Under the pieces are notes generated by a model. It did no database searches. It saw nothing but the letters and a program-made list of their open reading frames with translations, and was not told the DNA's origin. A stretch of 64,000 bases of DNA from Ruditapes philippinarum (Eukaryota). The stretch lies in assembly GCF_026571515.1 (NCBI RefSeq), contig NW_026865054.1:62001-126000 (forward strand), written 5' to 3'. This document shows, piece after piece, positions 17,436-20,400 of this stretch. The stretch's first letter is position 1, and every line of letters begins with the position of its first letter. The translations under genes were made by a program, and so were the position numbers.

Positions 17436-20400
17436 ATGGGAAAATTATTTAGCAAATCAAAGCATCCAAAGCAAAAGTAAGACGTCGTCATTTTTAACAT
17501 TTCTGTAGACTTGTAGTTGTTTTATACATGATAGCAGATAGAGCTTAGTCAGCTGTTAGTTTAAAATGAGTCATACGGTAAATTATTTGTGTCACAGGGT
17601 GAGAAAAATGTGCAGCCTGACCGGGAATCGAACCCGGGACCTTCGGAATACCGTTCCGCGGCTCTACCGACTGAGCTATCCGGCCGCTTACACATCTTCT
17701 CCCCTAAATAGTGAACAGTTCTGAACCGTGACATACTCCCCTGCTATATTGAAATTCGTCCTCGAATTTCACAGAGTTACAGAGCAATGTAAATTAAACT
17801 CTGAGCTATATCAGTCACGGTCCCCCGTTGGGCGCCAAATGTCACAGGGTGAGAAAAATGTGCAGCCTGACCGGGACTCGAACCCGGGACCTTCGGAATA
17901 CCATTCCGCGGCTCTACCGACTGAGCTATCCGGCCGCTTACACATCTTCTCCCCTAAATAGTGAACAGTTCTGAACCGTGACATTTGTTTTATGTGACAT
18001 GATATTCTTCCACATAATGACCTTTCTGTTTGTCGAAAATGTTAAACTTGAAAAATGCATGTAAAATTTTACAGGTGCATTAAAATGTAATGTGAATTAA
18101 AATTGAAAGTAAACAATCAGGATAGTAAAACTGGTCTTGTAAATGCAAGTTATAATGAGTAACGATAAATCTATTATTATTGATCTCATAATTATGGAAC
18201 ACGCGTCTCCCTATTTCCTCTAAAGTTGCTCACATATTTTAAATATGTGTGTTCGAAGAGAAGGCATCTGAATTGATGAACTTTCTCGAAAAGTTTTAAA
18301 AAATTCAGTCATCCTGTCTGTTGAATGATTATGAACACTGGAAATTGAAAGGGAGGTAACTTTCAATTTATTTTATTTATAAACTCATGTAATGCTGAAA
18401 AAAAATGTCTTAGATTTAAAGTTTCCATGCATCAAATTGTTTACAAAGGGCAGACAAATTAATAATTTATTTTGTTGGTAAACCCGTAGCTGATTAAGCG
18501 TCATTCTGAGTTGTCTGAGTAATACTGTAATATCTTGCCGAAAACAGACCTGAAAATGAGGCCAATAAGAGTGATATTTGACCTAGCTTTTTGTAAAAAA
18601 ATAAGATAGAAAAACAAGTTGACTGTTAAAAAGGACTGACCTCAATCAAGCAGCCAATTAGATATTTTCAGCCGTAATATTTTAAAACAGATGATATACA
18701 TGGGACATAATATAAAAACTGTTAGCAACTATAGCTCAGTGCGGTGCTATCTATTCATCCAGTCAGTCATAAACCTGAGATACCTTAATCACTTGGTCAT
18801 TTTCACCTCTTAGAAGATATCAATCACATCATTTTGCAGTACTCAAAGTGGATTTGATAGCCTAGATACAGCTGGAGCACACAGGGAAGACAAATCGTAT
18901 GCTAGAATGAATAGACATGTGTCTAACACATATCAACAGCAGCCAACTGGTGAAGCCATACATTCCGAGGCTGTTGTCAGCCTTGCCAAAATACAACCTG
19001 GACTCTGTTTAGCAGGTAGTAAGGACAAGGTACTGTATGGTTAAAATTTTAGTGGGTCGAAAGGCTTTTATGATATAAATTGTGCACAAGTGTGACGCCG
19101 TGGTTGTTGGGGCGTTACTTTTTAACCTGTATTTTTATATAAAAGTAAGACGATAGTTTAAGAAATAATTTTAACTTTATTTAGCAGTCACAATTTTGAT
19201 ATGTGTATATACAGTATTACGCATAATGTGTATTAATATTAAAATAATACAATTTTAATGCATATGTAATTATGTATATTAAACAGAGAAGATTGAAATA
19301 ACATAAAGTTAAAACAAAATAAACTAATTAACTATTATTGTACATAATAAATGAACATTATTTAAGCTTTAAAACAAATTGATTGAAATACTATTTTATT
19401 GGGAAATTTGTTTATATTAATAGAACAATTTATACTTTTTAAAAACAACTAATTTTGGGGAAAAGCTGTTTTATTTAAACACTTGCTTAACAAGTAAGAA
19501 GTACTAAGGGAAAGCATTCATGAAGATAAGATTATAATGATTGACTTACAAAAATTAAAAGCTTAATATTAAGTATGAACATTTTTTTAAAAACCTTATG
19601 TTTAAGTATATTAAAAAGAGTTAGTAAATTGAATTACTTGAAACAAATATATCTTCATGTATGATATTAAAGTAACTTGAAAAATTTTTTTAAAAGAAAT
19701 AATAGAATATACAAAAATTATGTTCATTATATTTATGTACAAAAACATTTACTATTTAATATTGCTACAAACAAGAGTTTATTGTAGCATTTATTAATTG
19801 AAATGAAAAATTTACTTTAAACAAGAAAAGAATAATAAAAGAGGACTTACCTATATAAAAGTAAGACGATAGTTAAGAACTAATTTTAACTTTATTTAGC
19901 AGTCACAATTTTGATATGTGACTTGCTAACTTTCGTCTTGACTTTTATACAGGTAGATTATGACATTGAGCCCTACAAGGCTTTTAGCACCATATGTTTT
20001 TATTGTTTAGAGTGGAAACTTAATGTAAATGTTGAAAAAACGAAAATTGTTGTTTTTAAAAACAGAGGTCACCTATCTAAACGAGAAAAATGGTTTTATA
20101 ATGATAACCTTATTGAAACAGTAAATGCCTTTACCTATGTGGGTTTAAATTTCACTAGTAAATTATCATTGTATAAAATGTCTGAAAATTTAGCTTTAAA
20201 AGCAAAAAAAGTATTAGTTATCCTTTTAAAAAATATGTATAATCTTTTACCAATGTCAGGTTAATCTTATTTTAAAATTTTTGACTCAAAAATATGTCCT
20301 GTTTTGTTATATGGGTCAGAAATATGGGGACTTGAAGTTAGGGATTGTATAGAACGTGTTCAAATATATGCATGTAAGAGATTTATGAATATTTCTTTAA

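What the first reader, a model, noticed from the sequence alone, without database searches (positions are those of the whole stretch)
17586..17987. Miniature LTR retrotransposon whose LTRs each contain a full tRNA-like Pol III gene
Seen in sequence: two 144-bp direct repeats (17590-17733, 17840-17983) with TG..CA ends and a 6-bp terminal inverted repeat TGTCAC/GTGACA; a 4-bp TSD TTTG; on the - strand a PBS 2 nt after the 5' LTR and a polypurine tract abutting the 3' LTR; and only 106 bp of non-coding interior. A 73-nt tRNA cloverleaf with intact A box (TAGCTCAGTCGG) and B box (GGTTCGAnTCC) makes up half of each LTR. Established knowledge: LTRs normally carry Pol II promoters, and plant Cassandra TRIMs instead carry 5S rRNA. 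From memory, tRNA-carrying TRIMs with 4-bp TSDs in animals have been named Helenus; this should be verified. Inference: this is a SINE/LTR hybrid parasite, Pol III-transcribed but copied and integrated in trans by an autonomous LTR element (Gypsy-like, given the 4-bp TSD). The 2/144 LTR differences imply a young insertion. Annotation pipelines would likely mislabel it as two tandem tRNA-Thr(GGT) genes.
Basis: partly seen in the sequence, partly recalled or inferred. Interest (0 to 1): 0.93.

Follow-up and report, generated by a model that had tools for sequence, protein, structure and literature searches.

The report
Helenus-type tRNA-bearing miniature LTR retrotransposon
This is a 394-base parasitic mobile element whose two end repeats each carry a tRNA-like gene; the kind (Helenus) was published in 2024, but this copy sits in what is very probably a clam lineage not listed there, and hybrid copies point to the large retrotransposon that copies it.

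Summary
The element lies on the minus strand:
- two 144-bp LTRs (2 mismatches) with TG..CA ends;
- a 73-nt tRNA-like module in each LTR (ARAGORN Thr-GGT; Rfam tRNA 52-56 bits);
- an 18-nt tRNA-Lys PBS, a PPT, and a 4-bp TSD.

It is a mobile family. The genome holds 1010 exact LTR-end 23-mers and 306 exact LTR/PBS junctions. Thirteen isolated copies have perfect, all-different 4-bp TSDs.

This is a Helenus/TRIMp3 element (Kojima 2024, PMC10886601), a kind already described in bivalves with Thr-GGT modules, Lys PBS and 4-bp TSDs, so the kind is known.

What is new is modest:
- Assembly statistics match the Manila clam, a heterodont. The paper lists only Pteriomorphia, and no listed family has these lengths.
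- Three hybrid insertions (a Gypsy LTR, then the PBS, TRIM interior and TRIM LTR), each with its own 4-bp TSD, point to a ~9-kb Ty3/Gypsy family as co-packaged helper. That family shares the termini, both PBS variants and a pre-PPT hairpin.

Other agents of this scan noted such hybrids elsewhere in this genome (s1-805756, s1-812926).

The parts
17586..17589 (.). Target-site duplication, left copy (TTTG on the + strand; CAAA in element orientation)
   Evidence: It is identical to 17984-17987. Thirteen other isolated copies have their own perfect 4-bp TSDs.
17590..17733 (-). 3' LTR (144 bp, TGTCAC...GTGACA)
   Evidence: 142/144 identical to the other LTR.
17604..17608 (-). T5 run 5 nt after the tRNA-like module in the 3' LTR. 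Proposed Pol III terminator and 3' end of the genomic RNA (R/U5 border).
   Evidence: The run is intact in 69/70 LTRs sampled. It and its twin in the other LTR are the only T4+ runs on the sense strand, and the element has no AATAAA.
17613..17685 (-). tRNA-like module of the 3' LTR (Thr-GGT, A and B boxes)
   Evidence: ARAGORN; Rfam tRNA, 51.5 bits.
17734..17745 (-). Polypurine tract AGCAGGGGAGTA abutting the 3' LTR
   Evidence: The same sequence occurs in 27 of 35 sampled units; the rest differ by a few bases.
17750..17771 (-). Hairpin UGAAAUUCG-AGGA-CGAAUUUCA, 4 nt upstream of the PPT. Proposed cis signal shared with the helper.
   Evidence: 9-bp stem present in MFE and centroid. (identical in 34/35 units). 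(a similar motif at the same place in Gypsy family X). (a hairpin at this place in every bivalve Helenus interior I checked in the part read, about 15 families, with different stems).
17820..17837 (-). Primer-binding site TGGCGCCCAACGGGGGAC, complementary to the 3' end of a host tRNA-Lys
17840..17983 (-). 5' LTR (144 bp)
17854..17858 (-). T5 run of the 5' LTR, which a full-length Pol III transcript would have to read through
   Evidence: It lies in the 3' strand of a ~17-bp extended stem.
17863..17935 (-). tRNA-like module of the 5' LTR, the proposed internal Pol III promoter
   Evidence: (55.7 bits).
17984..17987 (.). Target-site duplication, right copy (TTTG)

Best explanation
The stretch 17590-17983 (minus strand) is one young copy of a high-copy, non-coding LTR retrotransposon of the Helenus/TRIMp3 kind. 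Each 144-bp LTR has three parts: a 48-bp upstream part, a tRNA-like module with A and B boxes, and a 22-bp tail holding a T5 run and the integrase end.

The proposed cycle has four steps.
1. Inferred: RNA polymerase III starts at the tRNA-like module of the 5' LTR and reads through the first T5. It copies the PBS, the 106-nt interior, the PPT and the 3' LTR, then stops at the second T5. The result is a ~330-nt RNA with ~80-nt terminal redundancy.
2. Supported by the hybrid copies: this RNA is packaged together with RNA of a ~9-kb Ty3/Gypsy family (here called X).
3. Supported by the sequence: a host tRNA-Lys primes minus-strand synthesis at the 18-nt PBS, and the PPT primes the plus strand.
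4. Shown by the TSDs: a Gypsy-type integrase inserts the DNA and makes a 4-bp duplication.

Afterwards, unequal LTR recombination yields arrays and probably solo LTRs.
For: Mobility:
- Full-length copies at 95-99% identity lie on many contigs.
- There are 1010 exact LTR-end 23-mers and 306 exact LTR/PBS junctions, against 0 in the controls.
- Thirteen isolated 2-LTR copies have perfect, all-different 4-bp TSDs.
- Within-unit LTR differences range from 0 to 12 of 144, and 9 of 37 units have identical LTRs.
- Old copies with ~80% LTR identity also exist.

tRNA priming:
- The PBS is dimorphic as a block..GGGGGAC in 18 units and ..GTGGGGC in 8.
- The same two forms occur in family X.
- That is what copying the PBS back from two tRNA-Lys primers would give.
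- A host gene at C8751 has a Lys-CTT anticodon loop and the matching 3' half.

Helper:
- X has gag, RT-RNase H and integrase domains and 586-bp LTRs ending TGTCGC..GCGACA.
- It has the same PBS and a similar hairpin-PPT-LTR-start segment. The alignment score is 17, against a maximum of 10 in 3000 random windows.
- Three hybrids of the form LTR-X, AA, PBS, TRIM interior, TRIM LTR lie at different loci, each with its own 4-bp TSD: TATT, ATTG and TATA.
- Junctions on the 3' side were not found.
- This is the pattern expected if a plus-strand strong-stop DNA of X jumped onto TRIM minus-strand DNA through the shared PBS inside one particle.

Pol III design:
- The element has A and B boxes, no poly(A) signal, and T5 as the only T4+ run.
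- LTR-X has two AATAAA signals and ten T4+ runs.

Known kind: Kojima 2024.
Against: - The polymerase, the RNA ends and read-through of the 5' T5 are therefore all inferred. Kojima 2024 also states that Pol III use by Helenus is unproven.
- The copies of X that I read have interrupted reading frames, while the TRIM looks recently active. The working helper may therefore be an unsampled copy or a close relative.
- Many other Gypsy families here also use the Lys PBS.
- The reciprocal hybrid (TRIM LTR, PBS, X interior) was not found.
- The sampled copies are those most like the window copy, so the age spectrum is biased towards young copies.
Confidence: 0.88

Rival explanations
1. The structure and copying are as described, but the genomic RNA is made by RNA polymerase II or by read-through from host genes. 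The tRNA-like module then serves another purpose, such as an RNA structure for packaging, export or processing, or it is a passenger.
For: The T5 run 5 nt after the module in the 5' LTR should stop Pol III before the PBS. The whole LTR folds into a long rod, with z = -2.95, whose extended stem includes the T5, which suggests a structural role. A TATTTA motif lies about 20-25 nt upstream of the module. Pol III use is unproven for any Helenus.
Against: The element has no poly(A) signal, and the T5 runs are its only T4+ runs, whereas the helper LTR has AATAAA and ten T4+ runs. The A and B boxes and a T4-T5 run near the LTR end recur in most of the bivalve Helenus LTRs I checked. For the analogous Cassandra elements, the paper reports that transcripts start and end inside the 5S module.
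Confidence: 0.25
2. Family X is not the helper. X and the TRIM are both passengers in particles made by a third, intact Gypsy family that uses the same tRNA-Lys primer.
For: The copies of X that I read are interrupted. The genome holds many related Gypsy elements with long open pol frames at 48-81% integrase identity. Several LTR families share the Lys PBS.
Against: Only X shares near-identical LTR termini, the hairpin-PPT segment and both PBS forms with the TRIM. All three hybrids found involve X. A search for other LTRs ending in TGTGACA next to this PBS found none.
Confidence: 0.3
3. The LTR modules are working tRNA-Thr(GGU) genes, and the element matters mainly as a way of multiplying a tRNA gene.
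For: ARAGORN and Rfam accept them as tRNA. A short Pol III product ending at the T5 would be a normal pre-tRNA. Kojima lists bivalve Helenus families that could encode tRNA-Thr-GGT.
Against: The acceptor stem has a G-A mismatch and a G-U first pair, and the anticodon stem has a mismatch. From general knowledge, eukaryotes normally decode ACY with an AGU-derived anticodon, not GGU. The two LTRs of this copy already differ inside the module. Diverged copies lose the call or change it to Pro-CGG. The paper judges a tRNA function unlikely.
Confidence: 0.05
4. A plain local duplication of a tRNA gene, or a tRNA-derived SINE copied by a LINE.
For: A gene finder sees two tandem tRNA bp apart.
Against: The genome holds hundreds to thousands of dispersed copies with LTR-PBS-PPT architecture and fixed 4-bp TSDs, and no A-rich or LINE-like tail.
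Confidence: 0.01

Closest known systems
Helenus (TRIMp3) of bivalves, Kojima 2024, Biology 13:119 (PMC10886601), in particular Helenus-4_SaGl of the oyster Saccostrea glomerata
   Same: Both are non-coding TRIMs under 1 kb with a tRNA-like module with A and B boxes in each LTR. Both have a Thr-GGT anticodon loop, LTRs starting TGTCAC and ending CCTGTGACA, a TT spacer followed by TGGCGCCCAACG (Lys PBS), and a 4-bp TSD. Both carry a T4-T5 run after the module and the hairpin GAATTCG-AGGA-CGAATTTC before a GGGG-rich PPT.
   Different: No published family has the lengths 144/106/394. By eye the tRNA-like part is only roughly 70% like Helenus-4_SaGl, and the rest of the interior is unrelated. The host is very probably a heterodont clam, while the paper lists only Pteriomorphia. 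The paper inferred Gypsy helpers from PBS similarity alone; here hybrid insertions name a candidate family.
Cassandra (plant TRIM with 5S rRNA in the LTRs)
   Same: Both are TRIMs whose LTRs carry a complete small Pol III gene with promoter and terminator. In both, the proposed transcript starts in the 5' LTR module and ends in the 3' LTR module.
   Different: Cassandra carries 5S rRNA, not tRNA, and lives in plants. Per the paper, Cassandra transcripts have been observed; none has been for this element.
tRNA-derived SINEs (SINE2)
   Same: Both are short, non-coding, high-copy elements with a tRNA-derived Pol III promoter.
   Different: SINEs have no LTRs, PBS or PPT and are copied by LINE machinery. 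This element has all three, plus integrase-type 4-bp TSDs.
biv-TRIM (Satovic et al. 2019, PMC6934838)
   Same: Both are TRIMs of bivalves, including Ruditapes philippinarum, with arrays and solo repeats.
   Different: biv-TRIM has no recognisable PBS, and the paper's text reports no tRNA module in its repeats. It is a different family.

Membership tests
Helenus / TRIMp3 | TRIM architecture: two LTRs, total under 1000 bp, no coding capacity | tested here: met
   The element is 144 + 106 + 144 = 394 bp. The window has no ORF of 180 aa or more.
Helenus / TRIMp3 | tRNA-derived sequence with A and B boxes inside each LTR | tested here: met
   ARAGORN, Rfam tRNA at 51.5 and 55.7 bits, and the box positions.
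Helenus / TRIMp3 | PBS complementary to a tRNA just after the 5' LTR, and a PPT just before the 3' LTR | tested here: met
   The 18-nt PBS matches the 3' end of a host tRNA-Lys. The PBS and PPT are conserved in 37 units.
Helenus / TRIMp3 | 4-bp TSD in animals; interspersed multi-copy family | tested here: met
   There are 13 perfect, different 4-bp TSDs, including this locus, and 1010 LTR ends genome-wide.
Helenus / TRIMp3 | Transcription by RNA polymerase III from the tRNA-like promoter | not testable with these tools
Only design features support it. It is also unproven in the defining paper.
Helenus / TRIMp3 | Sequence relationship to a published Helenus consensus | tested here: inconclusive
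   The comparison with Helenus-4_SaGl and others in Data S1 was by eye only. Shared termini, anticodon loop, PBS, hairpin and PPT are clear.
Cassandra | 5S rRNA-derived sequence in the LTRs | tested here: not met
   The Rfam scan of 17300-18300 found tRNA only.
tRNA-derived SINE | No LTRs; LINE-type 3' tail | tested here: not met
   LTR, PBS and PPT are present, the TSD is a fixed 4 bp, and no tail is seen.
Ty3/Gypsy (for helper family X) | gag, then protease, RT, RNase H and integrase in that order between LTRs, with a tRNA PBS | tested here: met
   Pfam gives Retrotrans_gag (weak hit, 18.8 bits, below the curated cut-off of 24.1), RVT_1, RT_RNaseH, Integrase_H2C2 and rve in that order in L065. 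The frames are interrupted in the copies read.

The most novel reading that the evidence does not exclude
This clam family gives the first direct genomic record of which autonomous element copies an animal Helenus. Heterologous plus-strand transfer products show that TRIM RNA and Gypsy-X RNA share particles. In addition, the ~17-bp extended stem that encloses the tRNA-like module and contains the T5 run may make Pol III termination depend on context. It would be weak in the 5' LTR, where the upstream strand of the stem is not transcribed, and strong in the 3' LTR, where it is. That would solve the terminator-in-R problem much as retroviruses solve their poly(A)-in-R problem.
Probability: 0.2. 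Interest if true: 0.65.

Novelty: new member of a known kind. Interest (0 to 1): 0.4.

Why it matters
- **Annotation:** with at least 1000 LTRs, this family alone would add about a thousand false tRNA-Thr(GGT) gene calls to the genome.
- **Biology:** Helenus elements are the LTR-world counterpart of SINEs, yet neither their polymerase nor their helpers have been shown.
- **Testability:** a young, abundant family comes here with a named candidate helper and fossil recombinants. It also shows a primer-site dimorphism that records tRNA priming, so those questions can be tested in a farmed clam.
- **Origin:** presence in a heterodont, if the species inference holds, pushes the origin of molluscan Helenus beyond Pteriomorphia or implies horizontal transfer.

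Tried and rejected
- **Reads:** I obtained no empty-site or RNA evidence and did not try another route.
- **Other LTRs with the TRIM's end:** the pattern for other LTRs ending in TGTGACA next to the Lys PBS found nothing.
- **Pattern size:** I shortened and reran them.
- **Other hybrid types:** the reciprocal hybrid (TRIM LTR, PBS, X interior) and both 3'-side hybrid junctions gave 0 exact matches. These are exact-match searches only, so diverged examples could be missed.
- **Unbiased census:** Solo LTRs are inferred only from the ratio of 306 junctions to 1010 LTR ends.
- **Protein Atlas:** the search with the X integrase gave only generic integrase clusters and no help on the host.
- **T4+ runs:** the absence of other T4+ runs in the element is not significant on its own, since 38% of shuffles also lack them.
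- **biv-TRIM:** it is a different family.
- **C14366:** an apparent Gypsy interior flanked by TRIM arrays turned out to be a scrambled nested region with a palindromic LTR-PBS junction. It is not an autonomous element with tRNA-bearing LTRs.
- **Published consensus sequences:** That step was left out.
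Full report
**1. Observation**

Reading 17400-18200 and the repeat finder confirm two direct repeats, 17590-17733 and 17840-17983. 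They are 144 bp long with two mismatches. Each starts TGTCAC and ends GTGACA. The bases TTTG flank the whole unit on both sides.

ARAGORN finds only two tRNA-like genes in the 64-kb window. Both are Thr(GGT) on the minus strand, one per repeat. Rfam's tRNA model scores them at 55.7 and 51.5 bits against a gathering score of 29.

In element orientation (minus strand) the layout is as follows:
- The 5' LTR is 17983..17840.
- It is followed by TT and the 18-nt site TGGCGCCCAACGGGGGAC.
- The 106-bp interior ends in AGCAGGGGAGTA directly before the 3' LTR.
- The window has no ORF of 180 aa or more.

**2. A mobile family, not a local duplication**

- A DNA search of the window's own genome (1.408 Gb, 15,874 contigs) returned full-length matches at 95-99% identity on dozens of contigs. 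Many are arrays offset by 250 bp, of the form LTR-int-LTR-int-LTR.
- Exact-pattern counts give 1010 LTR 3' ends and 306 LTR/PBS junctions. The reversed-pattern controls give none.
- Among the fetched loci, 13 isolated two-LTR copies (the window copy among them) have perfect 4-bp TSDs, all different. The two-LTR matches without one are parts of arrays or nested copies.
- In 37 distinct units, the two LTRs differ at 0-12 of 144 positions, and nine units have identical LTRs.
- Old copies also exist, with ~80% LTR identity.
- The sample is biased towards copies like the query.
- The ratio of 306 junctions to 1010 LTR ends is lower than a population of pure two-LTR elements would give, which suggests solo LTRs.

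**3. What it is**

Kojima (2024, PMC10886601) defined Helenus as TRIMs with a tRNA-derived sequence in the LTRs. The paper reports:
- 4-bp TSDs in animals;
- 51 families in pteriomorph bivalves;
- seven bivalve families that could encode tRNA-Thr, with a Thr-GGT group in Fig. S1;
- Lys among the bivalve primers;
- Gypsy helpers inferred from PBS similarity.

No family in Table S1 has the lengths 144/106/394. In Data S1 the nearest by eye is Helenus-4_SaGl of an oyster. It shares the same LTR ends, the GGT anticodon loop, the TT + TGGCGCCCAACG start of the interior, the hairpin GAATTCG-AGGA-CGAATTTC and a G-rich PPT. The rest differs.

**4. Host**

- G000 has 1,408,138,951 bp in 15,874 contigs, and the window has 31.8% GC.
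- The long-read Manila clam assembly (PMC9803972) had 1,409,123,410 bp in 15,908 contigs and GC 0.32. From it, 27 contigs totalling 937,293 bp were removed.
- The match is close, so the host is very probably Ruditapes philippinarum, a heterodont. This is an inference from statistics. The lead came from note s1-803852.
- The Helenus paper lists only Pteriomorphia and does not mention clams.
- No later paper in the library reports Helenus in clams.

**5. Evidence for tRNA-primed copying**

- Among the units the PBS comes in two block variants..CAACGGGGGAC (18 units) and ..CAACGTGGGGC (8 units).
- The same two variants occur in copies of the Gypsy family described below.
- In new copies the PBS is copied back from the primer, so this dimorphism is what use of two tRNA-Lys species would leave.
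- Some Gypsy fragments carry the site extended to 40 nt of tRNA complement.
- A host locus has the anticodon loop CTCTTAA joined to that same 3' half.
- The first variant therefore matches a tRNA-Lys(CUU).

**6. The helper**

A search for the Lys PBS in a non-TRIM context found loci where a different LTR, here LTR-X, is followed by AA, the PBS and the TRIM interior. LTR-X is 586 bp and runs TGTCGCAGGG...GGACTGCGACA.

LTR-X belongs to a ~9-kb element with an LTR pair 98.6% identical (L065). Pfam finds gag (a weak hit below the curated cut-off), RT, RNase H and integrase in Ty3/Gypsy order. Its frames are interrupted in the copies I read. Its interior occurs in only about six places. Integrase matches at 90% identity or more are few, while related Gypsy families are many.

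X and the TRIM share four things:
- LTR termini that differ by one base in six;
- the PBS, in both forms;
- a hairpin-PPT-LTR-start segment with alignment score 17, against a maximum of 10 in 3000 random windows of X;
- three hybrid insertions.

The hybrids lie at C4098, C8737 and C8843. Each is LTR-X, AA, PBS, TRIM interior, TRIM LTR, and each is flanked by its own perfect 4-bp TSD: TATT, ATTG and TATA. One of them carries the second PBS form.

Normal LTR replication makes both LTRs alike, so each hybrid must be a first-generation product. The swap is exactly at the PBS, and the spacer comes from X. Exact-match searches found no 3'-side hybrid junctions. This fits a plus-strand strong-stop DNA of X annealing to TRIM minus-strand DNA through the shared PBS inside one particle. 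DNA-level recombination between separate loci would not leave TSDs.

I found these hybrids before reading the notes of other agents, which report the same kind of hybrid elsewhere in this genome (s1-805756; s1-812926, whose 838 letters equal the size of the C8843 hybrid).

**7. Transcription, the weak link**

In favour of Pol III:
- The TRIM has A and B boxes and no AATAAA.
- Its only T4+ runs on the sense strand are the T5 runs 5 nt after each module.
- LTR-X has two AATAAA signals and ten T4+ runs.
- T4-T5 runs near the LTR end recur in most of the bivalve Helenus LTRs I checked.
- T5 is intact in 69 of 70 LTRs here.
- This fits LTR = U3 (1-48), R (49-130), U5 (131-144), with Pol III ending the RNA at the 3' T5.

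The difficulty, raised in note s1-794721, is that the 5' T5 must be read through. The LTR RNA folds into a rod in which positions 29-45 pair with 121-139, so the T5 lies inside a ~17-bp stem (z = -2.95). Helenus-4_SaGl has a stem at the same place with a different sequence (by eye).

One testable idea follows. The upstream strand of the stem is absent from RNA started at the 5' module but present when the 3' LTR is transcribed, so termination may be weak at the first T5 and strong at the second. This is speculation. No RNA data could be obtained.

**8. A second shared structure**

The hairpin UGAAAUUCG-AGGA-CGAAUUUCA lies 4 nt before the PPT:
- It is in both the MFE and the centroid fold.
- It is identical in 34 of 35 units and is among the least variable segments.
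- X has GAAATGTCG-GGA-CGACATTT(T)C at the same place.
- Every bivalve Helenus interior I checked in the part of Data S1 that I read (about 15 families) has a hairpin there, with different stems.
- The paper does not mention it.
- It may be a cis signal for packaging or plus-strand priming. That is an inference.

**9. Verdict**

The finding is real and correctly interpreted, but the kind is already published. The added value is a new family in a probable new host subclass, a named candidate helper supported by fossil recombinants, and two conserved RNA structures worth testing. A helper-dependence experiment was referred, because it would need a working copy of a virus-like element of an animal.

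Noticed in passing
window 21758-22712: Tandem array of a 162-bp unit, 5.9 copies, 91% matches. Satellite-like, about 4 kb from the element.
   Followed up: no
L049 530-5796 (+) = G000:C15505:929-6195: A Gypsy element with uninterrupted gag (405 aa) and pol (1347 aa: RT, RNase H, integrase). It lies inverted next to a truncated copy of family X and is about 71-73% identical to X in pol at the DNA level. I found no LTR pair for it in the contig.
   Followed up: partly
L039 1501-1545; L041/L042 (G000:C7246, C10551): Gypsy LTRs ending GGGGTCACA-AA are followed by a 40-nt complement of tRNA-Lys instead of 18 nt, and then directly by mid-gag or mid-pol sequence. They look like products in which the primer tRNA was copied too far before an aberrant strand transfer.
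   Followed up: partly
L026 2147-2260 (G000:C14366:5040-5153): A palindromic junction: partial TRIM LTR, TT, PBS, inverted PBS, AA, inverted partial LTR. It sits beside a TRIM array and a Gypsy RT fragment and looks like an aberrant reverse-transcription or rearrangement product.
   Followed up: partly
L047 415-686; L065 726-998 (LTR-X): LTR-X contains a duplicated ~91-bp segment about 181 bp apart, each copy with an AATAAA. One hybrid copy (C8737) lacks one unit.
   Followed up: no
window 17840-17983 (-) and 17590-17733 (-): The whole LTR RNA folds as a rod: positions 29-45 pair with 121-139 (including the T5), and the terminal TGTCAC pairs with GTGACA (z = -2.95). An oyster Helenus has a stem at the same place with a different sequence.
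   Followed up: partly
L043, L046, L071: Diverged copies of the family (80-92% identity). ARAGORN no longer calls a tRNA in two of them and calls Pro(CGG) in the third, so the tRNA-like module decays after insertion.
   Followed up: partly
G000:C1295:53031-55593; C3753:71174-72617: TRIM copies lie within 0.5-1.5 kb of Gypsy integrase fragments (64-68% identical to the X integrase). They may be further hybrids or nested insertions. I could not fetch them.
   Followed up: no
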